From Trichoplax adhaerens (taxonomy: Eukaryota > Animalia > Placozoa): DNA of 64,000 nucleotides. Under the pieces are notes generated by a model, which was not told where the DNA came from, made no database searches, and worked only from the letters and a program-made list of their open reading frames with translations. The position numbers and the translations under genes are program-made. Positions 1,657 through 57,673 of the stretch are shown piece after piece (the stretch's first letter is position 1; the number at the start of each line of letters is the position of its first letter). The DNA is taken from assembly GCF_000150275.1 (NCBI RefSeq), contig NW_002060948.1, positions 5,687,464 to 5,751,463 of the forward strand. The letters are read 5' to 3'.

Positions 1657-3166
1657 ATGACGACAACCAACGTTCAGATATATAAATACACAGAAAGAGA
1701 TCCCCAGAACCATGAAGAGTCCGCTACAACCGTTGCAGGAAATGCTACTTACAGTGATCCAAATATTCGCTTAAAGGAACTTGGAATTGTTTTCAATAAT
1801 AATTATGAGTCAGGGTTTTCCTCAATAGCTATCGAAAATACCAACTGTAACAATCCAATTCATCAGGTACAATAAAAATTATTATTGATGATGTTCCCGA
1901 AAATGTAATCTGTAAATCAAATGTCTGTTTTACAGCCTACTAGGACTATAGCAGATATGACAGTACCCCAATCAGGGCAAAATCATCGAATTTGCCTAGT
2001 TTGCAAGTTTGTAATTGGTTTTGCTTCCGTGCAAATTCTCATAGCGATATTGGGATTAATAATTAATCCTTGTCCAATTGGTTCACTTTCAATAAGCTTA
2101 AATTTGTATTATGTTACATATTGGACTGCAGGACCAGTAAGTCAATTTAACGATAAATTGTGTAGGAACATCTAAATTCATTTTAATTAAGATGATGGAA
2201 AACTTTATCAATTATCATGCATTGCATCGTGATCTGAAATGTTCATGTGTCCACAGGTCTTGATATTAGCTATTGTTGCTTTGATAATCAATAAAAAGGA
2301 ACAACAAAGTAGCAGAAATGTAAGAAAATGATATTTCTATCTGTCATACCTACAAGATTGATCAGATAAATACAGAAACTTGTTTTAGAAAAAAGCTCTT
2401 GAATTTCAAAATATTTTCTGTCATGAAGGATAAAATATTGTTTACTAAAGGGCAACTAAAGACATTCTGCCCAAATTATAGCATAATTTTTAGAGATAGC
2501 CTAGTTTGATGCCGGAATTATAATTCTAAATTGACCTTAGAATATGAAGCTGCTGTATCAGACTATTTGTTTCTTAATCGTCAGGAGATAATATCATCTG
2601 GAATTAAATATTACTGTAGAAAGATAATTTCACGTGTAGTATCGATACGCTAGACATGATTGCATCCAGATTGAAGAAACTAAAAGATTTCTTGATATTA
2701 TTTTATTGACCAGGTTAAAATTCAAAGCTGGCTGGTGGTCATAATTATCTTATGTTTGTTAGGACAAGATGCCATTTTAGGAACATTTCTCTATAGATTA
2801 ACTAGATTTGGAATTAGTTGGTTTTGTAACGGCATTTTAAGCCGTTCGATGTTTATCGGCTTTAATATTGGTGTATTAGTTATTCAATTTTCAGTAGGTA
2901 TGTTTTACTGCTATTTTAGCCTTTTGGTCGCAAAATCATTGAAATTTCGTTCGTTGCCACAATCAAGTATTCAAAGAGCATCGGTAAAATGAACGTAAAC
3001 GAATATATTACAACCTCAGTAATTGAATTTTTCCATAGTCATGATGGCTATACTTTCGCAAATTAAACTTGTTTTATTCTTATAGGAGCCTCCATCAGAA
3101 CTACATTGTAATGATTGTGCATATTCGGTACTCTCTGACTTGTGTTGCATTGGTAAAACCTCGTAA
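1657..3166 (+). CDS. MS4A/CD20-like four-TM protein, array copy 1 (5 exons, ~274 aa)
   Basis: Manually spliced exons 1657-1866, 1936-2136, 2257-2319 (63 nt), 2714-2983, 3086-3166; all introns GT..AG, phase 0, giving an open frame. Motifs NPCPIG and TYWTAGP|VLILAIVALIINKKEQQSSRN|VKIQSWL; four hydrophobic segments; tail EPPSELHC..KTS*. The first and last exons are less certain than the core three. Confidence 0.8.
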
Positions 3167-6039
3167 ATATCTGTAAAACTGCATCAATTCTGCTAAAAAT
3201 TTTACAAATATGAGTAGATCGATCATTGTGCTTTACTATTTCTGAGTTATTGTACACGAAGTATTGCAATATGTTCGATGATGAGTAATAGCATAATTAA
3301 CTTAACGCTGCTGCTAAAGATGCAAATATCTTACAGAAATAATCATTTAGTGCTAGAAAATCATTTCATCTTTTACTTTTTCCTAACTAAAAATGAATAA
3401 CTTACCGTAGTAATAATTAAGTTATAATATGTAAGTTCTGCACGATAGCTGACAAACAATTGATTACGTACGGCTTAAAATTTGCCTTTCATACACTTTA
3501 TCAGGCTAAATTGTAAGGTGAAATTATCTGAATATAAGGTATTATTGCAATAAAATATAGGTTAGTTCGAAAGGAAAATGTTGTAAAAAGTTTAATGGAG
3601 AACTTTTTGAACAAAAATGATTCTATTTTCGTGAAAAGAGGTCCATCATCATAGGACATTATTTTGTATAAACATTTTGTGGAAGGAAATTTCTATAAAC
3701 AGTTTGTTGATTACGAAGATTTTTTCTCCTATTGGGATGGTAGAGAAAAAAATCAACAGATTGTCAACTCCAAGGATTATATCTCCTTCGTGGATGATAG
3801 AGTTTATCATAAATGCGACTATTTTACGATCATGAGATTACAAGAGTCTCCCAATTCCTATAGATTTACAATTTAGAATATATTATACCCACTGAAAATT
3901 TCGCAGTTATTATAAATTTCTACGAACTAAAATTAACTTATTTATTTTACTGGAAATATGACTAACGCTTACTTTTTATTGGCAAATTTAAAATCAAACT
4001 CTCTTATTTTTAGCTTATTCCGTATTTGATTGCACTTCAGCAAAACCTGCCTACAATTACAGTCAGAATTGCAGTTTATCTTATAATTCCACGATATATA
4101 ATTGTGTATCGTTGTATTTGGATTATTACTGCCTCAGTTTCGTATATTTATTTTCGTTACTTTCAATACCGGGCTGAGTAAAATTAAAAATTATTCTCTT
4201 TTATAGTATACAATTGAGAAATTTTACGTGCTATACTATAGTCGTGATGCATCCTATATTAGAATATATTGAAGGTTACATTTGGTGTAGTTAGGTTTCT
4301 AGAATAGATATTATTGTGATACTTATATTAGTTATCGACTAGTACTGCAATTTTATAATATAAGCTTTACGATAATATCTCTTCTTAGAAACCTAACCAG
4401 ATCAAATACAAGTATAACTGTCAAAGCAATCCAACATGGGGTGCATTACGACAACAACAGGTACCATGTTATTGACGCCTATCTTAACATCAAATATTTT
4501 ACTGCAAAGCAGCTTGTTGGAGGGTTATTAGTGAAATTTCACGCTATCATATCATCAGCAAATGATCTGAAATTGGACAGGAAACCGATCATTTGTATAA
4601 TGATCACAAAAAGTGGATGAAAGGGCTAAGATGTCGGAATGATTACGAATATAAGGAATATTCTTATGTAATACTAGTAATTCCAATGAAACTTGCTAGG
4701 GACTACTTTTGCAATCATAACGTTGAATAAAATGCAACTATAAATGATTTCCTAAATTAAAACTTGTTTGCTTTAATCACAACTGTTTTATTAGTACACA
4801 TGCTGCATGTACATTGAAACTGAAATCATTTTCATCTGTAGTAAATAAGATTTACAAAGAAGTAAAAAGTAGTAGCCGCGTCCAGTAGTGATATTTTTTA
4901 TATATTGGCATCGGAAAGTTTATGGTTCGGCTCGTCGGTACGAAATCTAAAAGCTAGATCCAGGTTCTGCTGCTACATTGCTGATCTTAGTATTATTTTT
5001 AAACTTTGACGAATTTCCACTTAATTACTGTAGATTCCTACATACATTAACCATATTTAAGTTTTCGAATAATTCCGATAAACTGACTTTGATGGTCGTA
5101 CCAAAAAATATACAAATAACTCAGACCATGATTAGCTTTCTGAATCAGTTCCTAAAATACAGTCATTGTGTAGACCATGCTTATTACCTAGGATCCTCTA
5201 TTATAGCAGATCTTGACTAATAAACTCTGACGCATTAAATTGGGTACATTTGTTATATTTATTTCTCATCTCTATTTTTTAGTAATGCAATCATCCGATA
5301 ATTATCCAAGATAGAAGCAAAGTTCAGACTTAGTCATAGAATTTGTGGAAAATTAAAATTATAGGAAATTTTACAAAGAGATCGATTAATACGTTATTTG
5401 AAGGATGCTATTATTTAGAAACCATATTATAATATATGCTTTCATCTTTATTTTTCGTCTAGAGAGAATTCTGTCCAATTTTTCAGTATAATTTCTATCT
5501 TATAGCTAACTAGCAACCTCGTCAGCTAAGACATAGCTTAGGTAAAGTTAAAAATTGTTTAATCGTATTCTCTGCTGATCAGGTATGTAATTTAGTTCGT
5601 ATTGCAACTGATTCTTTATTAAAAATTATGGATTTGGTTTTGATTTTTTTTATGTTCGAGTAAGTGTATTTAAAATATCCAAAACAAGATAAAAATTGTG
5701 TATCCTATTTAGATTCTTGAGAAATTTTATTGTACTTGTTTTTTTGAGTCGAGAAGAACTTTTATGTTAGGTGATATAGGCTAAATCTTTTTGGTGCTTT
5801 TTTATCATCAAGTTATTTCATCTAGACAAGGCAAAATTGGAAGCGAGTCTTTCTTTTGTATAATCTTTAATCCTGTCTACTATTGAATTTAGCATTATTT
5901 AGATTTCTATAGTAGACTTTTCCTCTGCTTTAAAGAGATGACAGATTAAATAGTTTATAGATATAACCTATTATATCACATTTTAATTGAACTTAAATTA
6001 TAGTAATCAAGTAAATCTTGTATGAGAAATTATTAACTG

Positions 6040-6262
6040 TGCACAACCAATTCTGTGAAAGGGTATAAAAGGGCGAGCAAATGCTCAGTCTGAGAGTTGG
6101 TTGGTAGATAGGGAACTGAACGATATTGATCAATCTTCTAATAAATAACTATACTAGCCTTATAGAACAGTCTTGTTCTTGTGTGTCAATCAAGTAGTCT
6201 AGCACCATCGCACGTTAGATCTCCAGTAGTAGTCGGGCGAATGAGTAATCTAATAGTCTAGT
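6040..6262 (+). mobile_element. Possible solo-LTR-like remnant (CCAAT, TATA box, poly(A) signal)
   Basis: ccaat ~6047, gggtataaaaggg 6061-6073 and aataaa ~6140 occur in the U3-R order typical of LTRs; no partner LTR or TG..CA boundaries were confirmed. Confidence 0.3.
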
Positions 6263-7339
6263 TTAATGGATCATGAAGACAATTTGATACTGGATCATTG
6301 CCTTTTAATGAAATTTGATGTAATTCATTGGAGGAATAAATTTCAGAATTGATAGGGTCTTTAAAACTGGATAAACTAAATAGTTTATAAATATAATCAG
6401 CTATTTAGTAATCTAGTCACTGCATGCGAGAATAAAATTATCCAACCATTTAATAACCTAATCATTAGGCAAACGAAAATTATATTATTAGATCATTGCT
6501 TGACTGCAAAACCTGATGCTCACATTCGTACAAATTATATATATACTTTACAATTATGCGTTAGTAACCTTGAATATTCCTAGAGTATATAATTTTTTAC
6601 TTTCATTTATACTTTTAAATTTTTTGATAATATTTTCTTTCTCTATCGTAAATAAGAGATAGGTTAAATCATTTCACGTCCTGCCTATAATATATTAGCC
6701 TGGTAGATACGTTTCCTTCATTTCTTAAAGCTTAATTTAATCTTAACGTACAAAACAGATATCTAATCTAGATTGCTGAATCATAGCATAAATAGGGCTT
6801 GCGACAGTTTACAGTGATAAAAATTACGCCTAAAATGATGTCATTAAAAATTTAGTTACGTCGCTCCTAAGTATGCAATTCATCATGTAGTGATCTTCTC
6901 GTTATACATTGACTTGATTACTTAATCATTAACTTTTAAACAATTAGACGTTTTGAATACATGTGTATCATTTACTTCGGGCTAAATAATACCTTGAAGG
7001 CAACAGCAGATAAAGTAAATAGTTAACAAAAATAGTTTATTATGTAATAAGACAACAAACCTATAAACTGGATTATCAGGTTATCCAATTTTTTTGCAGT
7101 TTGACATAGCTCATAGTAAGTTGTATAGAGTGCCTAATGTTAAAGTTTTATTATACTGTACTTTAAGCATATGCTCGCATTATTTTGTTTTCATGAACAT
7201 CCTTTAATTTCATGATTCAGCTCTCCGTGGTAACAGTTCTTATCCTTTGTAGAAAATTAGAGGAGTTGTATAATTTCAAATATCACATACTCTATAATAT
7301 TCTAATTGAGCCTTTAATGAATTGTTAGATCGTCAGACC

Positions 7340-8620
7340 TAGGCGTAATTTGGAATTTTGGCAGTCGTATAAATTATGTTTCTAATGATATCTTAATAAA
7401 GTTGTTTACTAGACAAATTATAAAGTTTATCCAGATGAATTAAATACAAAGATTTCAATTTATTATATACTGATTGTTAGGTTTTTTTCGTTATTTGACA
7501 TAGGCTAGCATCATCAAGCATTCAGGCACAAGAGGTAAAGTGAATAGATATTTTATAGCCTTGCAGCTTGATTTCTTCCATCGCTGCGATGGTATTACGT
7601 AGCTAAATATGTTTTACTTCTATAGATTCCACCTGAGCTTTGTAATGATCTCACATTTAGGATCCTCTCTTTTTTATGTTGTGTAATTTCATCAAAGTAG
7701 ATGTTCAAATACAAGTAGGATTATTAATAGTTATGTTATGTTCAATTGATTTCCATATTAGGGATTATTACTGGTTATGTTCACCATTTTAGGGATACTG
7801 TCATTAGATTATGTTTTAAAACATATTTGCTGTTGTCGTGGTTTCATTAACTTACCTTACAAATATAGAGTATTGATGTGTTAATTGCAATGGTATAAAA
7901 AGGAGAAAAGATAGAGAAAAAAAGGAGACTTTGGCTGATGTTAAATTTGAATAAGTCATTAAGTTGCTCGTTTGCAATTTGTTATTTGTTGTTACTCGTT
8001 GGTAATGTGAAAGTAAAGGAGATTATTTCAAGTTTGACTTGCAGTCGTGACCGATTAGATCATGTCTTCAGCATTTAGGATTGATATCTTATGGTTGTTA
8101 ATATACCCATATATGATTATGACTAAGTGATATCTATGCTGTAAGATTTATGACTATCTAAGCTGATCAGGCCATAAGTAGTGTAATGTAATTTTATTCT
8201 TCAATTCTTTCTTATCCTGTCTGTTGCTCTGTATGAAATCATACTCTCTATGATGCGATCTTCCTGTAAGTGTTGTCTACCAGTACTCTACCGCTGAGTG
8301 AAGTAGTTCAGTACTGCCTATGCCAGAGTTGCTACTTCTACATCTTCTGTTTAGCAATTGAAGCGATGGTATGATCTGCTGCTCTGAATGTCCGCTGCCT
8401 CCTTCTGATCAACTAGTATTTCACGTTTATCTTTCTTAACCTAAAATGAGGTACCTTTACATCATCAATTCTTAATATACACGTAAAATATCTTGTAAGC
8501 GTTAAAGAGTACTATTTTATAATTCATGTGTAAACATTTAAGTTAGTTCATGATCTATTTTCGCGATATAACGATTCACCTGAGGGGCAGGATGTAGTGT
8601 TATTAATTGTTACAAACCTT
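7340..8620 (+). mobile_element. Heavily decayed Ty3/gypsy-like integrase and 3' end
   Basis: A stop-interrupted frame reads FGSRINYVSND..FT..KFIQMN*I (7357-), KHSGTRGKVNRYF (7516-) and LNMFYFYR..SHLGSSLFYVV. These resemble integrase core motifs FG.P..IVSDNG.QF, YHPQ.NG..ER and YR.TPH..TG.SP in the right order. A purine tract gaggggcagga followed by TGTAGTG at 8582-8600 looks like a PPT-LTR junction. Judged by eye only. Confidence 0.38.
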
Positions 8621-8982
8621 CGTCTAGTAGAGGCTAGTGTGCAGGTAATGAGTTTAGACTCAGAGTCTTTCTATTTACTTTATTTTAGATAGTAAAAATT
8701 TTATATCTAGCCTGTTTAGCTGTTAGCACATGTACAAGAAGAGTTTAATACTCTTATCTAACTTATCTTCGCTTCTTCCTATCATTCTTATACTAGAATG
8801 GATAAAACAAAATCTTCTCTGATAGAAGGATGAACAATCATACATAATAAAAAACGACTTTTTCTAGGCTGCTTTCTGTGCAGATCTTTGCTGCATTATT
8901 GATGAGGAATTGCCTCATATGTACGAACTCAAACTTGTGGTTAATGTAATGTTATAGTAACATCAACACGGGTAATTCACTG

Positions 8983-17180: not shown

Positions 17181-17213
17181 AACCGTCAGTAAAGCGACGG
17201 GAGTTTGCACTAG
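17181..17213 (+). mobile_element. Helitron-like 3' terminus
   Basis: aaccgtcagtaaagcgacgggagtttgcaCTAG|t: GC-rich hairpin (ccgtc..gacgg), ~9-nt spacer, terminal CTAG followed by T. The same sequence occurs inverted at 60011-60043. Confidence 0.65.
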
Positions 17214-19481: not shown

Positions 19482-20920
19482 CTAGTACATTATAAACAAG
19501 GTTTGAGCGGAATCATAACAAGTTCATTAAGGAAATAGAATATGAGAGCAATAGATCTGGGGTGTCTAATGTTAAGAATAATATTCCAAATGCACATGCC
19601 AAAAACGTTGCTTTTGAAGTACCGTATGTCGCTCAGTGATTCGGTATTATTTTAATATCATTCAATATTTGCACACTAAAATATTAGAATGTTATTGAAT
19701 TAATGGATAAACACTTTACACCCTATATGCATTACAGGCGTTCTAGAAGGAATTTTAATCTAATAAAGCACACTGTTGTGCTATGGGGTCGACATTAGAA
19801 CCAATAACCGTATCTTATAATTTAGCTAATTGACATATCAACTAAATTTCAATAATAATTTGTTCTTGCTTTATTTAATGTAAAAGGAATTGATAAAGAA
19901 AGAAAATTTAATGGAAAAATATGAATATAGTTACATTTTAGCTATTAGATTTTTATGATTATTGATTACCTATAATGAATATCAGATAAAGCAAAAGGAA
20001 ATAAATGATTCGCAGATGAATTTGTCTGTTGATATATTGAGTACAGCACTTAATAATTGATATATCGAACGGATGTAGAGACTTGACGAACATAGAAGAA
20101 CTGTAGATGAAAAAGCCAATAAAGTGTATAGAACTAGAGTATGTAGATTTATACGTAAAGGTACAATAATTCATATATGAGTATAGTAGATGTTTTTAAG
20201 TAGTAGCCGCTATACTAATAATTTAGACGTTATACTTAAATATTTATGTGGTCATTGCCTTTAATGTACATTTAAACAAATTTAAAATGGGAGTAGATAA
20301 ATACGGGCTATGTGTCGATAGTATAATTTATGAGTGTCATATACTGCAGATATTTTATAGAATATTAGCCTACAAGTTATGCATGTTACAGTAGGTTTGA
20401 TTACTTTAGGTGTAAGTTTTCCGATAATTATCTTGCAGTAAACCAGTAAAATCCCATTAAACTGCATTCAGAAATAAACACAAATACAATAAGTAACAGA
20501 AGTACAAGATTTTTTACTTTAATAATTAATCTTTAATATCTCAATGTCATGCACCGGAATCACATGACTAGCAATTTTTATAATGTTTGCATGGTAATTT
20601 ACAATTTTTTACCTTATTAGTAATGAACTGCACTTAAATACAAATGTATTTTAGTCTTAATAAAATATATAGTATTAAATTAGCAATAAAAAAAAAGAAA
20701 AATTATGTTACTTAATATAAAAGATGTAGTTGAGGGGTTAGCTTGATAAGCCATAGATTGACTACTGTGGACGCAATTCTACACATCCTAAATTAGCTAT
20801 CAACATTTGATTCACGCTTTAGACGAAAGAAAATAATTTTAATCCTTACTAACGCAACAATACTACATCCGCGGCAGCGAATAGACAAAAGTAGAGCTTG
20901 GATTAATTTTTTATTTGGAA

Positions 20921-23530
20921 ATGAATAGCCCGAATAGTGTTCGCTTGAAACTGGTGCCTAAAGGCTACAGGGAAATTAAGATCAAGGGCATACCAGCTAG
21001 CAATTATATGAAAAGATTACTTCAGTTTAATATTACTACAACCGCTACCGCTGTTGTCATGATTGTTATTGCTGCCATAATGTTACATGATCCTAATGCT
21101 GTTATTCATACCCTTGGAGTGATATCGGTTGGCCATTGCTTTTTGGTTGGAATACCGGTAAGTTCATACATTCAGCTAACATAGAACAGAGTAAATAATT
21201 GGTTATATGAATCGGTTAGCATTATTTTATGATCACTTTATGGAAGATAGGTCAGTTTAGTATTTGTACTATGGTGAAAATTTATGCTTTTAAGGTCTTG
21301 AAAGGTTAGATTAACTACTAAGCTCTTAAACAAATACGGAGGTAATAAATTCTCCGCTGATCATCACATATGCTTACGGCTAGAGTAAAATTTGTCACTC
21401 TATCATTCTATACTTCTTCTAGAACCTCTGACTAGAGCAAAAGTTAGAGTAGAATTTTCTTTTTTAATTTCCTTTCAATACCGATTGTTTTTAATACTCA
21501 CTGCTGCATGAAAGAAGAGTATCATTATTTTTGTCAAATCTGTGTTGCCTTGAATTCAAACGCAAATTGGATTTTAATTACTGTAAGGTCATACAAATAG
21601 TTAATTCAGATTATAAATGTGGCCGATACTCTTAGCAATAGTACTTTGAGATCCAATTTCTAAAGATTGAAATTGTTATATAGTTTCCGAAAATTTCATT
21701 TTTAAATTTTAAGGAGTTTAAAACAAGGCAATATTTCTATCAAATGCCTGCTTGGAGGCTCACGTTTAGTTTATACGCTTCACCAGACTTTGATTCTATG
21801 CATATCATATCCGTAATTCACTGTAATGCAGTTTCGTTGCAATTTTTCTATGGCATTTTACCGATTAATAATAAATAAATGATGCTGGAAACTATCGACT
21901 TATCAATTGAAGACTGGGATACTCTAAAGATTAACGCGTTGAAATAATCTTCTTTCGTTTTTACCGCAGGTTTTAATCTCTAACTTTATTGGATTAATTA
22001 TTGGAGGCAGTAATCACTTCAAAAGATCATGGGTAAATAATTTTAGGTCCATTTTAATAACTTAATGTTAAATGAAATTTGGTCACGGACGTAAAAATTC
22101 TTTTTATATAGTCACAGTCAATATTCTACAATAGCAGATAAAGGAATCAGTCATTAAAGTACCTTAAAGATTCATAAAGATCGCATTATCTAAGATTACT
22201 TATGAATGTCCGTCCAAAAAGTACTATTTGATAATAAATTGTATTATTAGTCATTGTATAAGAAGGTTCAACCATAACGTTAAGTAAATATTAAGCTATA
22301 CATAGTATTTGATCGTTGGATGATAATTTCCTAGAGATCGCATACGGTTAGAGGTCTTGCTATAGTATTACTACGCAATTGAGGCAAAGAATTAGGATTG
22401 GTTAGCCAATAATTTATCTTAGAGAAGTGATTAAAATGAGCTAAACGTCATCAAATTACTGCTTGTTACTACATAATCAAAACCAGAAACTTTTAAAATA
22501 AAAGAACTAGTATATTTATAGATCATCCAGTTGCCAATTCACTAGTAGAACGGAAATACTAACATTATTGTACTTTATTAAACAGTTATAATTCATAAAG
22601 TAGTTCTAATCGTTGCGAATGAAAATATGTTCAAATTAAAAATTTTGAATTTCAATTTAACTTTCTGACCATACTTTTGAATATACTTTAGAACATATAG
22701 CATACAAAATTAGTATCGCGTAGTATAATTTTGTAGCACCTTTTCATATAATATTGCTAAATGAAATTATACTATAAAGCATAATAAAACTGAGATATTT
22801 AACGTAGTATAACTGTTTGTTAGATATAAGTAGATGCCTTTTAATGGCGAGTCAGTCATGTCATGCAAGTAATTAAACATTTAAAAGTAATTAAAAATGG
22901 AACAAGTATTGGTGTAGTTATGTTTTCTTTGTAGCAAATCTCTCTGTAATTTGTGGTAGTGTCATAGATTCCGTTGTTGCGAGAATTAAATATTATTATC
23001 ACGAGTATATCCTTTTCATGTTATAGTATGAGCAAAATTTCATATCCTTTATACGTATCTGGAAGTATTTGACCTCTGCTAATCTCATTTACACATTCTC
23101 TTCCAGATGAAATGTTATTTTAATACATTTCAGTTTTCACGACTCTTAAGTATATTATTTGGTATCAATATTAGAACAACAGATAAATTTTTAACACTTG
23201 CACTATTAACTAAAGCATAAAATTCTTGGGATATTGCTATGATAGGTAAAATTCCATTCCGTTGTAGTTTTTATGACAATAATGGCCATTATTGGAGGTT
23301 TGGTGATGGTGATTATTAATTTATCAAGGCTACACCTAATACCAGAGTATATACAAAGTCGAGATGGTGCTCAGCTCGTTAATATTCGATCGATGAAAAT
23401 TGGTACAGAAATAATTAATATTATGTCAATGTGTGCCTATGTCAGTTATGCCATGATATTTTGCCAGATCTTAAAAGTATATCGGAAACTTTATATTTAT
23501 TATTCAAGGCATCAAATCGCAAAATTACCG
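20921..23530 (+). CDS. MS4A/CD20-like four-TM protein, array copy 2 (3' end unresolved)
   Basis: Exons 20921-21157 (ends GHCFLVGIP|gtaagt), 21970-22032 (63 nt, VLISNFIGLIIGGSNHFKRSW), 23246-23530 (VKFHSVVVFMTIMAIIGG..AKLP|gtaatt); phase-0 GT-AG introns. Terminal exon not identified; the frame also reads through to a stop at 23782. Confidence 0.78.
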
Positions 23531-26218: not shown

Positions 26219-28062
26219 ATGGACATGGAAAATCTTCCAGAAATACAAGTACTGAATCAATCTGGTAGCGGTACTGAATCGAAAATTACTGTTACATTGT
26301 ATCAACTGGTCAACTGGTGCAAAATCAATATCGCTTTAGCAACTATTATTATTATTACTGGAATATTTTCCATAAGTTTGCCAAATTCATTTGGTCTCTA
26401 CACATCAGCTATAACTAAACTTGCTCATTGCTTTTGGGTTGGAGGACTGGTAAGTTGTCATTCATATCGAAAAAATTATAATATGTAACAACAGTTTGGG
26501 ATAGGGACAGTCGTATCGGCTTTGTTAGTACAACTTGTGAGTATTCCATAATCTAAGTTTGCTGTATAACTTTCTCTTAAGTATGTCATACACGATTTAA
26601 ATTAATTTTAAACTACTTTATAAATATTTCATTGTACGCTTTAATATTACGTACTTTTACTGGCTAGTTGTAATTAACATTGATTGTATTCGAAGTAGTC
26701 ATACGTGAATAAGCTCATTTACGAAAGATTATTTTATAGCTTAAAGTAAGGTTTTACCTGAAATGAAATTTGTAACCGAAACGGTAGTTTGATACCATTG
26801 GTATTTCCAATTTAATTTTAATGCGATATTTTAGTCCCTTATGTAAAGTAGAATAAAGACTTACTTGCCAAAACCGATACAGTTTCATATATCAATGTAC
26901 GGAACTTGAATGGGATTTTCACAACCTTGATAGTTGAAAATAATTAACCGTTTCTGGTCGTTATATGATTTTAAGATCTATTTGAACTAAATGCACTCGC
27001 ATTTTAATCGTATAAATGATACGAATTACGCTGACTACGATAGTATTAGCTATCACAATTACGTCTATGAAGAGTCGTCGGAATGTGCGGATTACGATTA
27101 ATTTAGGTTTTTATTTTATGATACCAAGGAATCAATATAGCATAGCAGGAAATATTACTGTGAATGTAAAATCTGACAAAGCAAGAGAATGATCGATTAG
27201 ACTAAAATAAATCTTATTGAATTAAGCTTCTAGGTTCTTAACTTTCGTCTTGTTATATGCTAGACTCAAACTAGTAATCATTGCACATTATTCAAGGTAT
27301 TAATTTAAAGAAAAATATAAATCTGGGACATTTAGAGTTGCTTTAACTTAATGATGTTCAAAACAGTGATTGATACGCGCACAGTTAGTCGATAGTAAAT
27401 AATCTTATGTATGACCTATTTACTTAACTAGCCTTTACTGCAATCATCAAAAATTTATTAACAAAATATTTAAATTGTTATTAATCATTATTTATGTGAT
27501 TTTTTGGTTAGACCGTCGTTTTTAGCCTTTATGGCATTTTAGCTTACAGAAACAAAGAATTTTCGGAGTTGAAGGTTTGTATAAGCTGATTGCATAACAT
27601 TTACTTGATACATACCGGTATTTTTATACTGTATGAGTGTGAAAGTATGATGAATTAAAAATCTCTAATACCATGCTTAGATACGGAGAAGATATAGTAA
27701 AACTATACTCAAAGAATTGAAAATACTTTGTTTATATATATTTCAAATATCATTTTTAAATGCAGGCATCCATTCATGTAGCAATTGCTTCCATTAATAT
27801 CATGGCTATCATCGGTGGATTTGTTGTTTTAGCATTCAATCTAGAAACCGTGATAAATTTACCTCATAAACCTAATAAAGACGGTACCGAATCAACAGTT
27901 ATTGATGTTGTTACCGTGCAGGTGATCTCAGTTCTTGTCAGCGCCATAGTAATGATTATTTATACATTATTCCTCTACGGCAACGTAAAGTCTGTGCGAA
28001 TGCATCATTACGTGCCAAGAAATTTACTAAGTCGTCCAGAACACGACTTCAGTCATACACTG
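26219..28062 (+). CDS. MS4A/CD20-like four-TM protein, array copy 3
   Basis: Exons 26219-26449 (HCFWVGGL|gtaagt), 27512-27574 (63 nt, TVVFSLYGILAYRNKEFSELK), 27766-28062 (ASIHVAIASINIMAIIGGFVVL..SHTL|gtaaga). Possible tiny terminal exon 28305-28319 (VFPI*), tentative. Confidence 0.8.
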
Positions 28063-35986: not shown

Positions 35987-37128
35987 ATGTCTACATCAAA
36001 ATCAACAACCGATACCATAGTTGCTGATACAATGGTTCAAGGCTCTGATGATACTGAGAAAGTAAAAGCTGTCCGAGGTATCATACGGAGACTACAGAAA
36101 TACTGGCTGGTTGGTACTTTACTCGGTATTACCCACTTCATTTTGGGCATTGTGGCGGTTGCTAATCCTTGTACGTTCGGCTCTCATGCCATTGGTTTGT
36201 CAGAATATGGGACTTGCTTCTGGCTTGCGGGAGTGGTAAGAAATACGTACATAGAAGTGCATGTCATGATCTATTATTCAAACCATAGAATAGCTGTAAT
36301 ACTACAATTTGAGTTAAATATATGAAGGCTTTTGATACATAAATTGTATTGTCTGAACTTTACTTGACAGTCAGCGTCTTCAGTACAATCAATTTGATTG
36401 TGTACTATTCTTGATACTTTTTGTGTAGGTAACTTTACTGAGTATCGTAGGATTCTGTATCGCCTTGACAAGAAAATTTACGGAAAGAAATGTATGAGCT
36501 GATTTTAAAATTAATCATCTCTGAAAAATTATCCATCGAAAATTTATATAAATAATATAGATTACTTTTCCTAATGGTACTAGCAACCTTATACGTAAAA
36601 TTTAGCGTTATACGTTAAAGCGTTCAATTATTTTTACGTAAGAATCTTTTCCTGCTTATTTCATATTTTGATGGTTATCCTTCATTTTGCCATCAAATTC
36701 TTTATGTAGTAACTGCTCATAGATATAAACAGTTTGTCAGAATATATCTTATGTGTATTTGATGTAGTAAGAACTGCATGACCGGTATTTTATTATTATA
36801 ATCTAACCATGGTAAAATTTATATCAATGGATAGATTAAAATTCATGGAGCTATGGCCGCTTTGGGAACTATTATGACTATCGTAGGATATGTACTATTG
36901 GGAATTAATTTAACAAAACTGCTGGATTTAAAGAATGGTCAGGCTTATATCGTAAATTCATCCTGCACTGTAGCCGTAAGCCTAATTAAAACGTCGTCCA
37001 TAATTATCACCCTTGGTTTATTTATTGTCGTTACAATCTACCTGATAATATGCGGATATACACTTCAGTCCTATTACTACACCTCGGAAGACCTAATCAA
37101 ACTCAGTAAATCTGGATTGCCTGTTCAG
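35987..37128 (+). CDS. MS4A/CD20-like four-TM protein, array copy 4
   Basis: Exons 35987-36235 (NPCTFG..TCFWLAGV|gtaaga), 36429-36491 (63 nt, VTLLSIVGFCIALTRKFTERN), 36835-37128 (IKIHGAMAALG..LPVQ|gtaggc). Terminal exon unresolved; the acceptor at 37226 would add only V*. Confidence 0.8.
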
Positions 37129-38785
37129 GTAGGCAGTATTTAAATTAGCTTTAAGTATTTTCAACTCAAATAAGAAGTGATGGTGAATGCCTATAAAGTT
37201 ACAATCAGATTCTTTTACTTTAATAGGTGTAAATTATGAAGAAATATTTTAAGATGACGTTGATAATAACTTTATTATAACATGGGCTGAGATGTTCGAA
37301 ATTTCGAGATTTATCAATATAACGAGTATTTGATTGTTCGATAACCATGGAATATTAGTATAAATTTTTTATAGAAATATCGTTGCAGCCAAAAAATAAA
37401 AATTAGGCTGGTACACTAATAATTATAATGAATTAATATTATCACCGCAGTAATATTTCGTTATTAAGTTAAGTTATGCAGCTAATTAATGTTTACGGTT
37501 AGTATTGTTTAGTTACTTTTTTCGGAAAATTTATTTCCGTGCCTGACTAAAATCGACCGTGTAGTTTAAAAAGGATTGTATACAGTATAATACATTAGCA
37601 TATTATGACTTACCATGCAAATACCTGATAAATTCCTTTTCCTATGGGTTGAATAAAAGTATCGCAGGAAGTTAATTATGCTTGATATTTTCTATAGATT
37701 TATGCCAGACGTTTTAGGTTGTGATCTTTACATGTATTTTTATGATTGTTTCATTTCGGAATCGTACTCTGAGTCTTTTCTGTCCTTGTTTATGTCTTTA
37801 TCCTTGATATTTTAGTTCTGTTTATCTTATGTTACTTCCATGGCTATTTTATCTCATGGTTCGCTATTAAAAGTTAATTCTGATCTCTGAATCTTCCTTT
37901 TATTAACTGGTATTGTGTGACTCCGTTTTCTGAAAGAGATTTATTCTGTATAATTATGCACGATACACTGTGCAAGACCATAAGGTAAAACTCTGCTTTG
38001 AGCATCTATGATCATGAGGATAATTTACAGATACCTTGAAGTATTTTTGGTTCTGGTCAGCCTTTTAATAGTTGATTAAATAGATTATAAAATTTTGACA
38101 TACTCGTATATTAAGAAAAACTGCTCAGAAAAATGGTAGCTAATTTGGAAGACATATATTAGTATCACTTCATTATTGCTTTTGTGGTGTAATAGCTCTC
38201 CATGATTATCAGTGGACTTGTCGCGATATACTGTAATTCAGCATTGAGATAATTATCATTAGTGGCCTATATCATAATATTGTCAATGCAAGCAATATAT
38301 TACCCTCGTAATACAGTAGTTCGCTTACATACACGATTATTATGGTAGTGCTTCGTTTCCTTCTTACCAGATTTAAAACAGATGTTAAAAGAATACAGAG
38401 ATTAGGTTGTGAATATTATGCAATATTCAGTAAGTGTGAGACATCAAACCTAACATCGATTTCTGAGTTTCGTTTTGTATTCCCGTAAAGTTATTCTAGG
38501 ACTGCCTCAATAACTTATCGCGAATGATTATAAAGAATGTGGATTATTGTAGAATATCACACTCTAGTCATCAATTATACAGTATATCATTTTCTAATAC
38601 CTCAGTCTGTTCAATGAGGAAATGAAATTGTCGGGTTTCCTGTACTGCTAGAGTAACAGCTCTGTATGTTCCGAATATATTTTTAAGATTTTAAGCAGAG
38701 CTGTGATATATACCAATCACGAAATTCCAAATTTTAGAAAAATAAGGGCTTTATTGAATCTTATACAAAGATTAACTACACACAG

Positions 38786-40399: not shown

Positions 40400-40574
40400 G
40401 TAGCAGCTAATCGCAATTGGTAGTTAAGCATGAGTACCAATAACGTAGCAATGCTAGTGTTACGTGGTGGACATTGAATTTAGAATAGGACAAGACGTAG
40501 CCACTAATCACAATTGGCAGTTAACCACGAGTACCAATAATGCATCAATGCTAGTTTTACGTAGTGGACATTGA
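40400..40574. repeat. ~78-bp direct repeat, period 97
   Basis: gtagc..ctaatc.caattgg.agttaa.ca.gagtaccaataa...caatgctagt.ttacgt.gtggacattga at 40400-40477 and 40497-40574. Confidence 0.9.
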
Positions 40575-42621: not shown

Positions 42622-44270
42622 ATGTCTACGTCTACGCGACATGTAAATATTCCAAATGATCACGAATTTACTGAGAATAGGTCTACTGTGTCATCGATGA
42701 ACAACCTTAAAGCACTTTGCTTCATCACTTACGCGATTGCCTTAATCCAAATTGCTCTTGCTATCTCCGGACTTATACTTCCTTGCAAATTTGGGATCTA
42801 CATCATCAGTTTCAACCGGTTTGGTAATACCTACTGGATTGCAGGGCCGGTACGTTCTTTATGTGCTTTGTTGTTATTCGCTGGATAAATTGATAATATC
42901 ATAATTTGCAATATTAGTTGCAATATAGGGATTTTATTAATTTCCTTCGAGCTAAGATTTAAAAATTTTACGTTGGCGCGATTAAGAATCAAATCTTATT
43001 TCTAAACCTAGCCAATGCACCGAGGATGAAGCACGTTGAATATTTATAATATCAAACTGCTTGAACCATATCTAACGATTGCGTTGTTTATAGGTGCTTC
43101 TCTATACCTTCTTAGTTGGATCTACAATCCCAAAAAATAATTCTGGTATGAATAATGTAAGAACATTATCATATAATGGCAAATACAGTAACTTTTAATA
43201 ATGCATATCGTACCCTTATATTGAGTATAATTATCTGGCCGAAAGTATCATACATTAATTGTCTTAATCGAATGGATAACGGTTTAAAGGAACACTTTTA
43301 AATATAAGAAATTCTTATGTGATCTTAACAGCACTTGCAGTCGGCATTTATTTAACTTATCCCCTTTAATTTACATGATTAGTATTGTACAAACTTTCTC
43401 ATATGTGTTTTAGTCTTGAAACATGGTGAATACTCGTATTTAATTTCAGGACATGGTAGATTAATTTACTGCATAATGTGTTTCTTATGTAGTTGTAAGC
43501 ATAATTCTCATATGGTTGAATTCTATAAAAATAACATAACAATTATCTTATCAATCTGATACGCTACGAATTGATTATTTCCCCCTAAATATTTTCTGCA
43601 AAATAGTTATAGCAAGGTGCAAACATGTATTCGTATAGTGCGGTAATAAGCGCTGCATTTTGTAATAGCATAATTCCAAAGTGTTCTGTCCTTGATTTAA
43701 ATCTTTCTAGATATCATTTATCAAGATGGGAGCTTTTCTATGTGCGTTATGCATAATAGCCGGGTTTGTAATTTTAGGTCAAACTCTAAAGGTAGCTGGC
43801 TTTCTAATAGCGGATTTAGATTCTGACGATATCTTTCACAGCGACGTTTGCAAAATACCCTTGAATCAAGCTTATACGCCTGCTTTGCTAGTCACTATTC
43901 TACAACTCTGCATTCATATTTTTTATTTTGGAGTCTGCATCAAGTTTATAAGGATAAGTAACAGTCCAAGTGTATCGCTAGAGAGAAATTCTGGCCATAG
44001 CTTACTTATGGTAATGCAACCTAAGCTACCAATTATTAATTTTTTATGATCATGATCTTAATATGGACAGTTAATGATTATCTAAAGTTTGGTTAGCATT
44101 AACAGCGATATTATCATTATTATTTATATCTGCAGATACAACCACTACCAGAAGAAGCTCCACCCTATGAATTTTGCGATAATACTCAGTACAGAGCTGC
44201 ATTCGCAATAGATAAAAGACTGCCAGAAAGTGATATAGATCAAACTCACGATAACAGTTCAAGTTTGTAA
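42622..44270 (+). CDS. MS4A/CD20-like four-TM protein, array copy 5 (4 exons, ~241 aa)
   Basis: Exons 42622-42849 (LPCKFG..NTYWIAGP|gtacgt), 43094-43156 (63 nt, VLLYTFLVGSTIPKNNSGMNN), 43711-44010, 44136-44270 (IQPLPEEAPPYEFC..SSSL*); complete phase-0 GT-AG structure. Confidence 0.85.
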
Positions 44271-47200: not shown

Positions 47201-47482
47201 GTACTGTAAAATTAATTTTGAAGGCTACAAAAGTAAAAATGAAGAATGAATGGCTACGAAAACACATTCCGAATATATTATAGAATTTAGAAAAGTTATT
47301 ATCGCGACTTAAAATTTTTCATTTCACCTTTTGAGCGATTACATATGTAATAATTTTGTCCAAATGATGATGTTTAGAGAATTCAATGATAGTTTTTCTT
47401 GCTTTATGTTTTTTAAAAAGTAAATAGTATCAACAAGCACTTGGCCAGTATAAGTTAATAAGTCTTTCATTTTTTTTAGAAA

Positions 47483-48991
47483 ATGGCAACTTGCAGTCGG
47501 AAATTAGCAAGTAGTATTAAAGTACTTTGTGGCATTGCTGTATTATTTAGTTTAGTCCAGTTGGTAATTACCGCTATTAGCTTTACCAAACCTTGTCCAA
47601 TCGGGCTCTATTTCACTAGTTACACTCAATATGGAAATGGTTTTTGGGTTGGAGGACCGGTAAGTTTATTAATCACTTCTGTTTATCTTTATTACATATT
47701 TAAAAATCATGTTTATAATTAAAATAGTTTGAATACTATGGAAGTCAAATTGATTTGTTATAATTAACTACAATTAGGTTATTGATACAGTATTAGATAC
47801 AGCAAAACTAATCGATTAGGTACTTGGAATAAGTTTCAAAATAATAAGCGATTATGTAGCTACTATCCTTGCTATTTTCTTTCAACTCTACGATTCACTA
47901 CTAAAATTTAGATTCACCTATTTTAAATTGTTTGCAGATATTTTTATTATCCGCGTTTATCACTTATGTTGCCCAACACTCATACTTTTCTACAAGGAGG
48001 GTAAGGCATTAATTGTCCACATTATCATTACTGATTATATTCAGTCCAATAAGAACAGTTCAATATCTATAGATAATAGAAATTCTGATGTAATAGCTAC
48101 GTACTTTGCTATCTTTAAGTTCACGATACAACGATTGGGAGGTCCCCATCAAAGCCTTCACGATGTAATCCATTTCTGGAAATCTAATTTTCTTATCATA
48201 TTTAAATCCGGTTACATTAGGTTGTTTGCGTGAAGGCGGCTGCATATTTATGCGTAGCATGCATCATCGGCGGAGTTGTGGTAGTTAGATTGGCTATACG
48301 GTCACTTGATGTATTACAGTCATACAGAAAAGTTATACGTTTTAATTGCGGTGTTTCTCAAGTTCCGATGTCACAAATCTATGGGCCATTTATAGCTACA
48401 TCTAGTATGCTGGTTATTTTCTATGCATTCTATCTTGTACTTTGCCTGTGCATCATAAGAATAGATGGCCTCGAACTTGAAAGCATTAAAACTTCGATTC
48501 ACATCGGCCAAGCATACTCGTACATGGTAAGCATGGTGTATTTTAAAACGAAATATTGATTTTCTCGCTAAGTGATACGTATTGCTGTAATTTTAAAATA
48601 AGTTGATATGAAAACAATGAAATATTCAATTTGGCTCATAGCTAGTGCTTAAGAGTAGAAAAATAATTTTAAAAAGATATTCTACCAAAGTTACTGAATG
48701 TGCCATTACTATCAATTAATTTAAATGAATTTTTGTTCGCATTTGTAAAATTACGGTATTGCTTTACTTTTGATGCTTATTTATTAGTTAGTTCTTGTGT
48801 TTATATTATAAGTATTGATAGGGTTGTAAATTTTATTCTTTTGTATGGAATAATTATCATGATATGAACTATGCATTTAATGTTTCTAGAAGAAGCAACC
48901 CATATCTTCGTACGAGAATAGCGCTCGAACAAGTAATACATTAGAAAAGGACAGCGAAGCGGGCATACAGGATGCCAATGCAACCACCTAA
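47483..48991 (+). CDS. MS4A/CD20-like four-TM protein, array copy 6 (~215 aa from this ATG)
   Basis: Exons 47483-47659 (KPCPIG..NGFWVGGP|gtaagt), 47938-48000 (63 nt, IFLLSAFITYVAQHSYFSTRR), 48221-48526, 48890-48991 (KKQPISSYEN..ATT*, NAGNAG acceptor). A strong acceptor (tttttttag, 47479) just before the ATG suggests an unlocated upstream exon. Confidence 0.83.
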
Positions 48992-55704: not shown

Positions 55705-57673
55705 ATGGCTACAACTTCATCTCCAGTGGCAATCAATCCACCAAGTTATCAAATTATTATAACTACTCTTAATAATAGAATGCCAGCAAATCGCATTAAA
55801 GTATTTTCCTTCATAGCCATAGCTATCGCCATAATTCAAATTGCGGTGGCCGCGGTTGGATTGTCTGAGCCTTGCCCAATTGGTCTGTACGTCTTAAGCT
55901 TTGGTCATTATGGAAATAGTTTCTGGGTAGCAGGACCAGTAAGTTCACTGAATCACTTGGCATATTTTAAACTTTTATTGCAATGAATATCATAGTTTTA
56001 CTAGTATAATTGGAAACAATCAGATAAGGATAAGTTTTCTACCGAAACTGTATAATTTGAATTATTGGAGTGAATTAGCTTTCTGGACAGTACTTTTATC
56101 TTGAATCTAGTGCTAACATACAGACATAAAATATCTTTCTGTAAATGCACATTCACCTATACATTATAAGCACCTATGATGGTATTTCTGCAAGCATTTG
56201 GTTGACTAGAACACTTCTCTTTAAAAAACCACCTGAAAATTGCTATTTTGCTTATAGATATTACTCTATGCTTTGGCTATTGGCTGCAGTGTGGATCGGA
56301 ACAACCTTACGAAAAATAGGGTAAGGCTGTGCGACTTTAAAATATACTTATATTAATATGTTTTATAAGTACATATTGGACTGATTAATTACTACCAGTA
56401 GTTGTGCAATAACGAAAACTATTTCACATGAATATTCGGTAAAATTTCTAAAGCATTATTTTGCTACCAGATATACTCTTTGCTGCTGTTACCGTACCTT
56501 AATAAGATATTAGCAGAGCAATTTTTCGATTTATCGTTTAAGAAATTTATAGATCATTGCAGCAAAAGAAATATTTTGCGCTAAAATCATTTTTAATTCT
56601 AATTTGGTCATTTTAGATAGCTAATATGAAGATAGGCGCGTTTCTATGCGTGCTTTGCATCATTGGAGGATTTGTAGTATTAGGTCTGACTATACGCGCG
56701 CTTTCAATTCTGTCGGTTTACTCTGACCACTTCCATTTCGATTGCGGCACTCATAAAGTTTCTGTAAATGAAATATATACTCCTGCTGTTTTAACAACAA
56801 CCGTCCACTTTGGAATCTACATATTTTATTTTTCGTTTTGTGTGTGGATTATGAGACTGAATAACGATTTCTATCCAAATATGTTCGCTGCACGATCTAG
56901 TGGTCGTAATACTTTTGTGGTAAGACAATATTTTGAGAAATTAAGTGAAAAATATATATTACAAGGTCTTCTACCTATATTTATTGTATCATTAAAGTGT
57001 TACTTTTTTAAATGCTAATCAGAAGTAATTGTCATTGAATTAAATTTCTACTTCAAGTTAGGAATTAGTCACTATTATAGTTTGGAAGTAATAGCCTCAA
57101 ATCCAGAAAACAGTCGTTATTTACAGCTGATTAAGTCTCACATATCAATTTAGTATTGGAAATAATCATAATTTGAAAGTGAGAATTATTGTTAATACAT
57201 GCAGCAGTCAGTATGCCTATGAATCTTTGATTTTATTCTGCTAGCAAATCAATAAGGCTAGAAATAATCACCATGTACAATTAATAAATTAAATCCGCAA
57301 AAGCGATCTTTCTTAACAGTTAATTCATAATTAGAAAACGATTTCCGTATTTCTTATTATAGAAAATTAATAATCTACATACAAGTATGAATTCATATTA
57401 AGTCTTTACAGCTGATAATTGTGATTGCTAATTACATTGTCTAATATGTATCTATCATAAAATAATTCAAATCACAACATTTACACTTCCAGCAACACAT
57501 TCTATTATCTGTAAATATTAAATCTATGCAAACTTGTTTGCATACAATCTACGTAGGTTCAACCACCAGCAGAAGAAATTCCTTCATACGAGCAATGTAT
57601 TGCAAAAAGTAAAATACTGACGAAAGATGGTAAATTAGCTGCAATAAATGTGCCTCAGACAGCTCAAGCATAG
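55705..57673 (+). CDS. MS4A/CD20-like four-TM protein, array copy 7 (4 exons, ~238 aa)
   Basis: Exons 55705-55938 (NPPSY..EPCPIG..NSFWVAGP|gtaagt), 56258-56320 (63 nt, ILLYALAIGCSVDRNNLTKNR), 56617-56919, 57557-57673 (VQPPAEEIPSYEQC..AQA*); complete phase-0 GT-AG structure. Confidence 0.85.

What the first reader, a model, noticed from the sequence alone, without database searches (positions are those of the whole stretch)
1657..57673. Tandem array of seven highly diverged MS4A/CD20-like tetraspan genes: candidate lineage-specific receptor repertoire
Seen: seven co-oriented spliced genes with four hydrophobic segments, a shared (F/Y)W-x-x-G-(P/L/V) motif (FLVGIP in copy 2) and the same intron positions. 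Their extracellular loops and tails are very different, and all core exons are intact. Known: vertebrate MS4A genes (CD20, FceRI-beta) sit in tandem clusters, and mouse MS4As act as non-GPCR chemoreceptors in necklace olfactory neurons. Inference: this is an independent expansion in a compact-genome invertebrate, plausibly a chemosensory or immune-recognition receptor or channel family that automated annotation would miss or fragment.
Basis: partly seen in the sequence, partly recalled or inferred. Interest (0 to 1): 0.9.

Follow-up and report, generated by a model that had tools for sequence, protein, structure and literature searches.

The report
Diverged CD20-like tetraspan genes, Trichoplax
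Seven neighbouring genes of the simple animal Trichoplax encode small four-helix membrane proteins that are very diverged relatives of the CD20/MS4A family; they are real and mostly already listed as "uncharacterized", and nothing yet shows that they are receptors.

Summary
The window (Trichoplax adhaerens, scaffold C1409:5,687,464-5,751,463) carries seven co-oriented, intact genes. All share one exon plan: an exon that ends four residues after the W of a [FY]W-x-x-x motif, a 63-nt second exon, an exon for TM3, loop and TM4, and a tail exon in the four genes mapped in full. All checked junctions are phase 0.

The array continues beyond the window, with at least 20 paralogous loci on this scaffold.

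Kinship with CD20/MS4A is supported, but only indirectly:
- No window protein matches Pfam CD20.
- Their profile matches a more conservative set of paralogues (hhalign 99.4%, E 1.4e-21).
- That set's profile hits FceRI-beta (E 2.5e-6) and CD20, and one paralogue passes Pfam's CD20 cut-off.
- AlphaFold models of two window genes match FceRI-beta best (Z 15.3 and 16.8), ahead of sarcospan, CD20, tetraspanin, MARVEL and claudin folds.

Five of the seven genes form a derived clade with a Cys in each outer loop.

The receptor idea is untested. The outer surface is small and divergence is not confined to the loops. No RNA data could be reached. Public annotation lists these genes as uncharacterized, some truncated or chimeric. 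The scan has already noted CD20-like genes elsewhere in this genome.

The parts
1657..3166 (+). g1 (TrispH2_009449 type, 274 aa). Exons: 1657-1866 (extra N-terminal exon), 1936-2136, 2257-2319, 2714-2983, 3086-3166
   Evidence: Public protein P0016 maps completely onto these exons. The motif YWTAGP is followed by GTAAGT. The T. adhaerens model TRIADDRAFT_57755 (P0018) is a chimera that leaves exon 4 early and adds exons at 4389-8957.
20915..23530 (+). g2 (TrispH2_009450 type). Exons: 20915-21157, 21970-22032, 23246-23530. The tail exon is not resolved.
   Evidence: FLVGIP followed by GTAAGT. 63-nt exon 2. Exon-3 donor GTAATT in phase 0 at 23530. P0021 matches these parts but carries extra doubtful exons. 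No Cys in either outer loop.
26219..28062 (+). g3 (TRIADDRAFT_57756, public model truncated). Exons: 26219-26449, 27512-27574, 27766-28062. The tail exon is not resolved.
   Evidence: FWVGGL followed by GTAAGT. The 63-nt exon 2 is present in P0005. The open frame continues through TM4 to a GTAAGA donor at 28062; the public model splices out TM4.
35987..37890 (+). g4 (TRIADDRAFT_57757, 226 aa). Exons: 35987-36235, 36429-36491, 36835-37128, 37816-37890
   Evidence: P0009 maps completely. AlphaFold pLDDT 78. Best structural match is FceRI-beta at Z 16.8 and TM 0.72-0.80.
42622..44270 (+). g5 (TrispH2_009453 type, 241 aa). Exons: 42622-42849, 43094-43156, 43711-44010, 44136-44270
   Evidence: P0002 maps completely with 2 residue differences. 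The donor is GTACGT. No T. adhaerens model was found among the hits.
47483..48991 (+). g6 (TRIADDRAFT_57758 truncated; TrispH2_009454). Exons: 47483-47659, 47938-48000, 48221-48526, probable tail exon 48890-48991
   Evidence: The tail exon KKQPISSYENS... is taken from P0017 and located at 48890 behind a tttctag acceptor.
55705..57673 (+). g7 (TRIADDRAFT_57759, 238 aa). Exons: 55705-55938, 56258-56320, 56617-56919, 57557-57673
   Evidence: P0003 maps completely. AlphaFold pLDDT 76. Best matches are FceRI-beta at Z 15.3 and TM 0.67-0.73.

Best explanation
These are seven real, intact, tandemly duplicated genes of Trichoplax adhaerens. They belong to a placozoan-only family with at least 20 loci on this scaffold. 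That family is a strongly diverged branch of the CD20/MS4A-like tetraspan superfamily.

Architecture of each protein (about 185-275 aa):
- A cytoplasmic N-terminus.
- TM1.
- A turn of about 5 residues at the outer face.
- A kinked TM2 carrying the FW-x-G-P motif, which is split by a phase-0 intron.
- A short basic inner loop.
- TM3 with an IGG motif.
- An outer beta-hairpin of about 25 residues.
- TM4.
- A variable cytoplasmic tail on its own exon.

Shown here: the gene structures, the family, the fold and the kinship chain.

Inferred: by analogy with the closest structural match, FceRI-beta, and with sarcospan and CD20, they most likely act as small membrane-embedded auxiliary or scaffold subunits. 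In this reading they pair through their helices with other membrane proteins and couple them to cytoplasmic machinery through tail motifs, which are proline/acid-rich P-x-Y-E stretches and a few canonical PPxY. The variable hairpin and tails would give each copy its own partner or regulation. They would not be stand-alone ligand receptors.

In the derived clade (g1, g4-g7 and three downstream copies), a Cys at the top of TM2 and a Cys in the hairpin probably form a disulfide.
For: Gene reality and structure. Orthologues in Trichoplax sp. H2 differ by only 1-3 residues and are intact. Fragments from unnamed assemblies give one-to-one best matches to g2 (70% identity), g4 (60%) and g3 (56%).

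Family size.

Kinship:
- Window-clade profile A7 against conservative-paralogue profile A8: hhalign 99.4%, E 1.4e-21 over 167 columns.
- A8 against all PDB sequences: the top six are all MS4A proteins, with FceRI-beta at E 2.5e-6 and CD20 at about 2e-3.
- The whole-family profile A6 also ranks the same six first, at E 0.02-0.09.
- Paralogue P0029 scores 31.6 bits on Pfam CD20 (cut-off 27.9) and P0010 scores 26.3 bits over model positions 6-154.

Fold:
- g7 model: FceRI-beta Z 15.3 and 14.0, sarcospan 13.3, CD20 12.3, tetraspanin-type 11.1, claudin design 10.6, synaptophysin 10.3. The Foldseek top 3 are FceRI-beta.
- g4 model: FceRI-beta Z 16.8 and 15.2, TM 0.72-0.80.

Protein-language-model neighbours of g7 with a family name are CD20 clusters; this is a lead only.

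Shared intron: Trichoplax exons that do match Pfam CD20 (E 1e-4 to 1e-3) end at APIW[SM]G-x-x followed by GTAAGT. That is four residues after the W in phase 0, as in this family.

Cys pair: present in both loops in 8 of 8 clade members and in neither loop in 9 of 9 others.
Against: - No window protein or exon matches Pfam CD20.
- The window-clade profile alone finds no MS4A protein in the PDB.
- hhalign of the family against three Trichoplax CD20-matching first exons is negative.
- Four-helix bundles give middling Z scores with many unrelated proteins, and the margin over sarcospan is only 2-3 Z units.
- The Cys co-occurrence is a single evolutionary event on the tree.
- Only some tails carry a canonical PPxY.
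Confidence: 0.6

Rival explanations
1. Receptor repertoire. The copies are stand-alone chemosensory or immune-recognition receptors, like mouse MS4A proteins in necklace olfactory neurons, with the variable second outer loop binding ligands.
For: - Large tandem expansion with deep divergence; tree end branches have a median of 1.25 changes per site.
- ECL2 is the least conserved region at 14%.
- Clade members g5-g7 lack clear one-to-one matches among fragments from other assemblies, which hints at faster turnover.
- A loop-to-loop Cys pair would stiffen a small binding surface.
Against: - ECL2 is only about 25 residues and ECL1 about 5.
- The N-terminus, tail, inner loop and TM4 are about as diverged as ECL2, so change is not focused on the exposed part.
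- g2, g3 and g4 have well-kept orthologue-like matches.
- There are no expression or ligand data.
- The best structural match is a signalling subunit, not a ligand binder.
Confidence: 0.2
2. Ion-channel or channel-regulator subunits. The proteins oligomerise and conduct or gate cations, as has been proposed for CD20, MS4A12 and TMEM176.
For: - Conserved polar or small residues inside helices: Q in TM1 of the derived clade, H at the start of TM3, and the G/P kink in TM2.
- Kinship with the CD20 family.
Against: - Solved CD20 and FceRI-beta structures are listed as dimer or receptor-subunit entries, not as pores.
- No oligomer prediction was run.
- This remains analogy only.
Confidence: 0.1
3. 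Unrelated four-helix family. The resemblance to CD20/MS4A is convergence of small tetraspan membrane proteins, and the family is an orphan placozoan invention, or a MARVEL-type protein as UniRef names g4.
For: - No direct Pfam or PDB sequence hit for the window clade.
- hhalign against the CD20-matching Trichoplax exons is negative.
- A published analysis concluded that invertebrate look-alikes of MS4A share only short transmembrane similarities (PMC2826416).
- UniRef names g4 'MARVEL domain-containing'.
Against: - The chain A7 to A8 (99.4%) to FceRI-beta (E 2.5e-6) is specific: the top six of 177,635 PDB sequences are all MS4A proteins.
- One paralogue passes Pfam's curated CD20 cut-off.
- MARVEL structures score Z 10.3-11 against 15.3-16.8 for FceRI-beta.
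- The intron position inside TM2 is shared with CD20-matching genes.
Confidence: 0.08

Closest known systems
FceRI beta chain (MS4A2), structures 8K7T, 8Y81, 8YVU
   Same: - Best structural match of both folded window proteins: Z 15.3 and 16.8, rmsd 3.1-3.3 over about 151 of 160 residues, TM 0.67-0.80.
- Best sequence-profile hit of the conservative paralogues (E 2.5e-6).
- Four helices, small outer loops, an FW-G motif at the start of TM2 and cytoplasmic tails with Tyr motifs.
   Different: - Identity is only 11-15%.
- There is no ITAM (YxxL-x6-8-YxxL) in the tails.
- The window clade has FW-x-[AG]-G-P instead of P-F-W-G-A.
- The derived clade has a Cys in ECL1 and one in ECL2.
- No Fc-receptor partners are known in placozoans.
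CD20 (MS4A1) and Pfam family CD20 (PF04103)
   Same: - Tetraspan topology and tandem gene clusters.
- Paralogues P0029 and P0010 match the Pfam model at 31.6 and 26.3 bits.
- CD20 chains rank right after FceRI-beta in the profile search, with Z 11-12.3.
   Different: - The seven window proteins do not match PF04103.
- CD20 has a much longer second outer loop; that its disulfide lies within that loop is from memory, not checked here. In this family the two Cys sit in different loops.
Sarcospan (dystrophin-glycoprotein complex, 8YT8_S, 9C3C_n)
   Same: Second-best structural family (Z 12.6-13.9). It is a small tetraspan that serves as a scaffold subunit of a larger membrane complex.
   Different: No sequence-level signal. 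That placozoans lack muscle, where this complex is best known, is my own knowledge.
Other CD20-like genes of Trichoplax noted earlier by this scan (nine-gene array; 12-helix 'triple' genes)
   Same: - Same genome and same superfamily, with tandem arrangement.
- Shared exon plan, with an intron four residues after the TM2 tryptophan.
- One public model in the 2.71-Mb cluster of this family (P0007) holds two units in one chain.
   Different: - This array consists of single-unit genes on other DNA.
- Five of the seven form a derived clade with the loop Cys pair.
- Its profiles did not detect the loci that match Pfam CD20 best.

Membership tests
CD20/MS4A-like family (Pfam PF04103) | Match to the Pfam CD20 model at or above the curated cut-off (27.9 bits) | tested here: not met
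   None of the seven window proteins or their exons gives any CD20 hit at E <= 10. Paralogues outside the window do: P0029 at 31.6 bits and P0010 at 26.3 bits.
CD20/MS4A-like family (Pfam PF04103) | Profile-level homology to solved MS4A proteins | tested here: inconclusive
   Direct test: profile A7 against the PDB finds none. Transitive test: A7 to A8 at 99.4%, E 1.4e-21, and A8 to FceRI-beta at E 2.5e-6 and CD20 at 2e-3, with the top six all MS4A. A6 ranks the same six first at E 0.02-0.09.
CD20/MS4A-like family (Pfam PF04103) | Four-helix tetraspan fold that superposes best on MS4A structures | tested here: met
   g7: FceRI-beta Z 15.3 and CD20 12.3. g4: FceRI-beta Z 16.8 and CD20 12.2. The Foldseek top 3 are FceRI-beta for both. 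Tetraspanin, MARVEL, claudin and connexin folds score lower.
CD20/MS4A-like family (Pfam PF04103) | Short first outer loop and an aromatic-W-G motif at the start of TM2 | tested here: met
   [FY]W-x-[AG]-G-P is found in the window genes and YHPLWIGGM in paralogue L008. HMMER aligns it with the FWGAVL stretch of FceRI-beta.
CD20/MS4A-like family (Pfam PF04103) | Shared gene structure: phase-0 intron inside TM2 and a short exon for the rest of TM2 | tested here: met
   The position is the same (W + 4 residues, followed by GTAAGT) in this family and in the Trichoplax exons that match Pfam CD20. Exon 2 is 63 nt here and a likely 57 nt in one CD20-matching gene. No comparison with vertebrate MS4A genes was made.
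Vertebrate MS4A clade proper (orthology to MS4A1-15) | Placement inside the vertebrate MS4A or TMEM176 radiation on a tree | not tested
   No vertebrate sequences were fetched. Published analysis places MS4A proper in jawed vertebrates only (PMC2826416). I claim superfamily kinship, not orthology.
MARVEL domain (PF01284; UniRef's name for g4) | Match to the MARVEL model or best fold match to MARVEL proteins | tested here: not met
   The only hit is E 0.16 on one exon of g3, and full-length g4 gives none. Synaptophysin and synaptogyrin score Z 10.3-11.0 against 15.3-16.8 for FceRI-beta.
Tetraspanin / claudin-PMP22 | Large Cys-rich second loop with CCG (tetraspanin), or a long first loop with W-GLW-C-C (claudin) | tested here: not met
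   ECL1 is about 5 residues and ECL2 about 25 residues, with at most one Cys each. Tetraspanin-type chains score Z 10.6-12.2 and claudin-type chains 8.4-10.6. The Tspan15 sequence hit has E 0.096 and a long gap.
MS4A-type chemoreceptor (function) | Ligand-evoked response; expression restricted to sensory cells | not testable with these tools
No paper names these genes.

The most novel reading that the evidence does not exclude
The derived, Cys-stapled clade (g1, g4-g7 and the downstream copies) is a fast-evolving surface-recognition repertoire of a nerveless animal. Each copy would present a different disulfide-braced hairpin that senses food, microbes or conspecific tissue. That would put non-GPCR, MS4A-type chemoreception or self/non-self recognition at the base of animals.
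Probability: 0.12. Interest if true: 0.75.

Novelty: new member of a known kind. Interest (0 to 1): 0.35.

Why it matters
A 2010 analysis concluded that invertebrates lack MS4A-like genes (PMC2826416). Here, profile, fold and intron evidence together tie a large placozoan family to the CD20/MS4A superfamily. That supports an origin of this tetraspan type before the placozoan and vertebrate lineages separated.

It also gives names and corrected exon maps to genes that public records list as uncharacterized, truncated or chimeric.

The gain is modest. Pfam already flags some Trichoplax relatives as CD20-like, the scan has noted the superfamily many times in this genome, and the function remains unknown.

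Tried and rejected
Searches that gave nothing:
- Pfam on single exons found no CD20 match.
- PDB profile searches with exon-only alignments returned only designed coiled coils.
- A word-index homologue search with g7 exon 3 was blank; the length limit of that tool explains it.
- The same search with profile A8 returned only the family itself.
- The ESM Atlas gave no usable hit on the exon-1 peptide.
- hhalign of the family against three Trichoplax CD20-matching first exons was negative, but the 58-70-residue profiles are too thin.
- The Pfam CD20 model run over the whole genome found three weak exon hits, none in the window.
- tRNA, Rfam and Pfam scans of the intergenic ORFs found nothing.
- Paper searches found no mention of these locus tags and no Trichoplax-MS4A link.

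Readings rejected:
- The MARVEL label for g4, and the tetraspanin and claudin readings (see the membership rows).
- The repeat finder family D1 ('100%' over 300 nt). My check shows only 14 identical bases next to the N gap.

Joined step left out: the spliced models were searched exon by exon by reference, and I sent no joined protein of my own to any tool. The full-length sequences used are public gene models returned. A script only checked that those public proteins are colinear with the window's exons.
Full report
**Where this is.** The window is G000:C1409:5,687,464-5,751,463 (+) of a 105.6-Mb assembly in 1,414 contigs. Proteins encoded here are on record as Trichoplax adhaerens TRIADDRAFT_57755-57759, on a contig of exactly the length of C1409 (5,978,658 bases). 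Near-identical proteins are on record from Trichoplax sp. H2 as TrispH2_009449-009454. G+C is about 30% throughout.

**The observation.** Open frames on the + strand show seven pairs of hydrophobic exons.
- Each first TM exon ends at a GT donor directly after [FY][WL]-x-[AG]-[GI]-[PLV].
- An unbiased search for AG...GT phase-0 exons in each intron returned, as the most hydrophobic candidate or (in g3 and g5) the second, a 63-nt exon. It encodes about 12 hydrophobic residues followed by a basic stretch.
- Exon 3 starts in phase 0 just before TM3, and all seven exon-3 donors are phase 0.
- Public proteins P0016, P0009, P0002 and P0003 map completely onto g1, g4, g5 and g7. They add a tail exon in each and an N-terminal exon in g1 that starts at 1657.
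- Profiles of the seven first exons (A1) and seven third exons (A2) find each copy at E 1e-21 to 1e-39 genome-wide.

**How I handled the spliced models.** Full-length sequences came only from the public models that the exon-1 profile search returned.

**The family is larger than the window.**
- A1 and A2 also hit five more + strand copies just downstream (5.769-5.800 Mb).
- They hit three - strand copies at 5.885-5.977 Mb and a second cluster at 2.70-2.74 Mb on the same scaffold.
- Eleven of the 13 first-exon hits outside the window have a GT donor at the identical position. One has CTAAGT instead, and the remaining hit stopped short of its donor; with that locus, L008, extended to its GTAAGT the count is 12.
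- A profile of 20 first exons (A4), run against 1.84 billion representative proteins, found 45 proteins at E <= 1e-3. Every named one is Trichoplax. The rest are short, unnamed predictions from other assemblies.

**Is it CD20/MS4A-like? Direct tests fail.**
- No window exon or full-length protein matches Pfam CD20.
- The window-clade profile A7 finds no MS4A chain in the PDB.
- As a positive control, first exons of three other Trichoplax genes match CD20 at E 1e-4 to 1e-3.

**Indirect tests agree with each other.**
1. A7 matches the profile of the more conservative paralogues (A8) with 99.4% probability, E 1.4e-21, over 167 columns spanning all four helices.
2. A8 searched against 177,635 distinct PDB sequences returns FceRI-beta at E 2.5e-6 and CD20 at about 2e-3. 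The top six hits are all MS4A proteins. The whole-family profile ranks the same six first.
3. Paralogue P0029 passes Pfam's CD20 cut-off (31.6 against 27.9 bits), and P0010 scores 26.3 bits over nearly the whole model.
4. AlphaFold models of g7 (pLDDT 76) and g4 (pLDDT 78) show four long helices and a beta-hairpin.
   - An all-against-all structural search puts FceRI-beta first at Z 15.3 and 16.8.
   - Next come sarcospan (12.6-13.9) and CD20 (11.0-12.3).
   - Tetraspanin-type, MARVEL, claudin-type and connexin chains score lower.
   - Foldseek agrees.
5. The CD20-matching Trichoplax exons end at APIW[SM]G-x-x followed by GTAAGT. This is the same place, four residues after the tryptophan, and the same phase as in this family. 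One of them is followed by a likely 57-nt second exon.
6. The nearest named clusters by protein-language-model features are CD20 clusters, at scores that count as a lead only.

I therefore accept superfamily kinship with about 85% confidence. I do not claim orthology with vertebrate MS4A genes.

**Internal structure of the array.**
- A maximum-likelihood tree of 19 public proteins gives a supported clade (96/95) of g1, g4, g5, g6, g7 and three downstream copies.
- g2 and g3 fall outside it, in an unresolved group with the conservative copies. I split one two-unit model, P0007, into halves for this tree.
- All eight clade members carry a Cys just after TM1 (P-C) and one Cys in the second outer loop. 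All nine others have neither. This points to a loop-to-loop disulfide, although on the tree it counts as a single event.
- Within the clade, mean pairwise identity by region is:

| Region | Mean pairwise identity |
|---|---|
| ECL1/TM2 start | 50% |
| TM3 | 33% |
| TM1 | 26% |
| Rest of TM2 (exon 2) | 25.5% |
| TM4 | 20% |
| Inner loop | 20% |
| Tail | 19% |
| N-terminus | 15% |
| ECL2 | 14% |

- Divergence is therefore general and not focused on the exposed loop.
- H2 orthologues differ by 1-3 residues.
- Fragments from unnamed assemblies give clear one-to-one matches for g2, g3 and g4 but ambiguous ones for g5-g7.

**Tails.**
- The tail exons of g5, g6, g7 and a downstream copy share a proline/acid-rich stretch that ends in P-x-Y-E or Y-E: QPPAEEIPSYE, QPLPEEAPPYE, QPISSYE and DEPPEYG.
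- Canonical PPxY occurs in the N-terminus of g7 (PPSY) and in one downstream copy (PPEY). The H2 model of g6 also reads PPKY, but in a stretch I take for read-through.
- These could be WW-domain or phosphotyrosine docking sites. That is inference only. An earlier scan note on another CD20-like array led me to look.

**Function.** Nothing here tests it.
- The closest structures are subunits of larger membrane complexes (FceRI-beta, sarcospan).
- The outer surface is small, and the most conserved parts lie within the membrane.
- I therefore favour auxiliary or scaffold subunits over stand-alone receptors. I hold the receptor reading at about 0.2 and the channel reading at about 0.1.

**Annotation and literature.**
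- Among the proteins retrieved, T. adhaerens v1 has no model for g2 or g5, a chimeric g1 and truncated g3 and g6. The H2 models recovered cover g1, g2, g4, g5 and g6.
- No paper in the library names these loci or links Trichoplax with MS4A.
- One study denied that invertebrates have MS4A-like genes (PMC2826416). Another lists a CD20-like family among metazoan-wide clusters (PMC5620054).
- The scan has 23 earlier notes on CD20-like genes in this genome, on other DNA.

**Limits.**
- As a result I have no RNA evidence, no synteny and no dN/dS.

Noticed in passing
L001-L007 (C1409:5,768,500-5,977,500): The array continues past the window's end. There are five more + strand copies at 5.769-5.800 Mb and three - strand copies at 5.885-5.977 Mb, close to the scaffold end. 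One copy (L001:751-921) has CTAAGT where all others have a GT donor, so it may be a pseudogene or use another splice site.
   Followed up: partly
window 4389-8957 (+): The T. adhaerens model TRIADDRAFT_57755 (P0018) leaves g1 in the middle of exon 4 and adds five exons (4389-4460, 5583-5659, 7504-7534, 8543-8644, 8868-8957). These have no Pfam match and probably belong to a separate, unidentified gene between g1 and g2.
   Followed up: partly
L008-L011 (C1409:2,703,500-2,737,000): A second cluster of the family lies about 3 Mb upstream. Its public model P0007 (403 aa) holds two four-helix units in one chain. An earlier scan note places a 'triple CD20-like' gene about 3.03 Mb before this window, so the multi-unit genes may be built from this same family.
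   Followed up: partly
window 57557-57673, 44136-44270, 48890-48991; L003: The tail exons share a proline/acid-rich motif ending in P-x-Y-E or Y-E: QPPAEEIPSYE, QPLPEEAPPYE, QPISSYE and DEPPEYG. It is a possible WW-domain or phosphotyrosine docking site and is untested.
   Followed up: partly
window 30780-31056 and 40382-40574: Two short tandem repeats, a 109-nt unit x 2.5 at 91% and a 97-nt unit x 2 at 84%, lie in intergenic DNA. The stretch 30-34 kb has somewhat higher G+C (0.34-0.37) and no recognisable gene.
   Followed up: no
window 62948-62997: A run of 50 N marks an assembly gap. The repeat finder reported a 300-nt '100%' pair (44926 / 62998) next to it, but a direct check shows only 14 identical bases.
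   Followed up: yes
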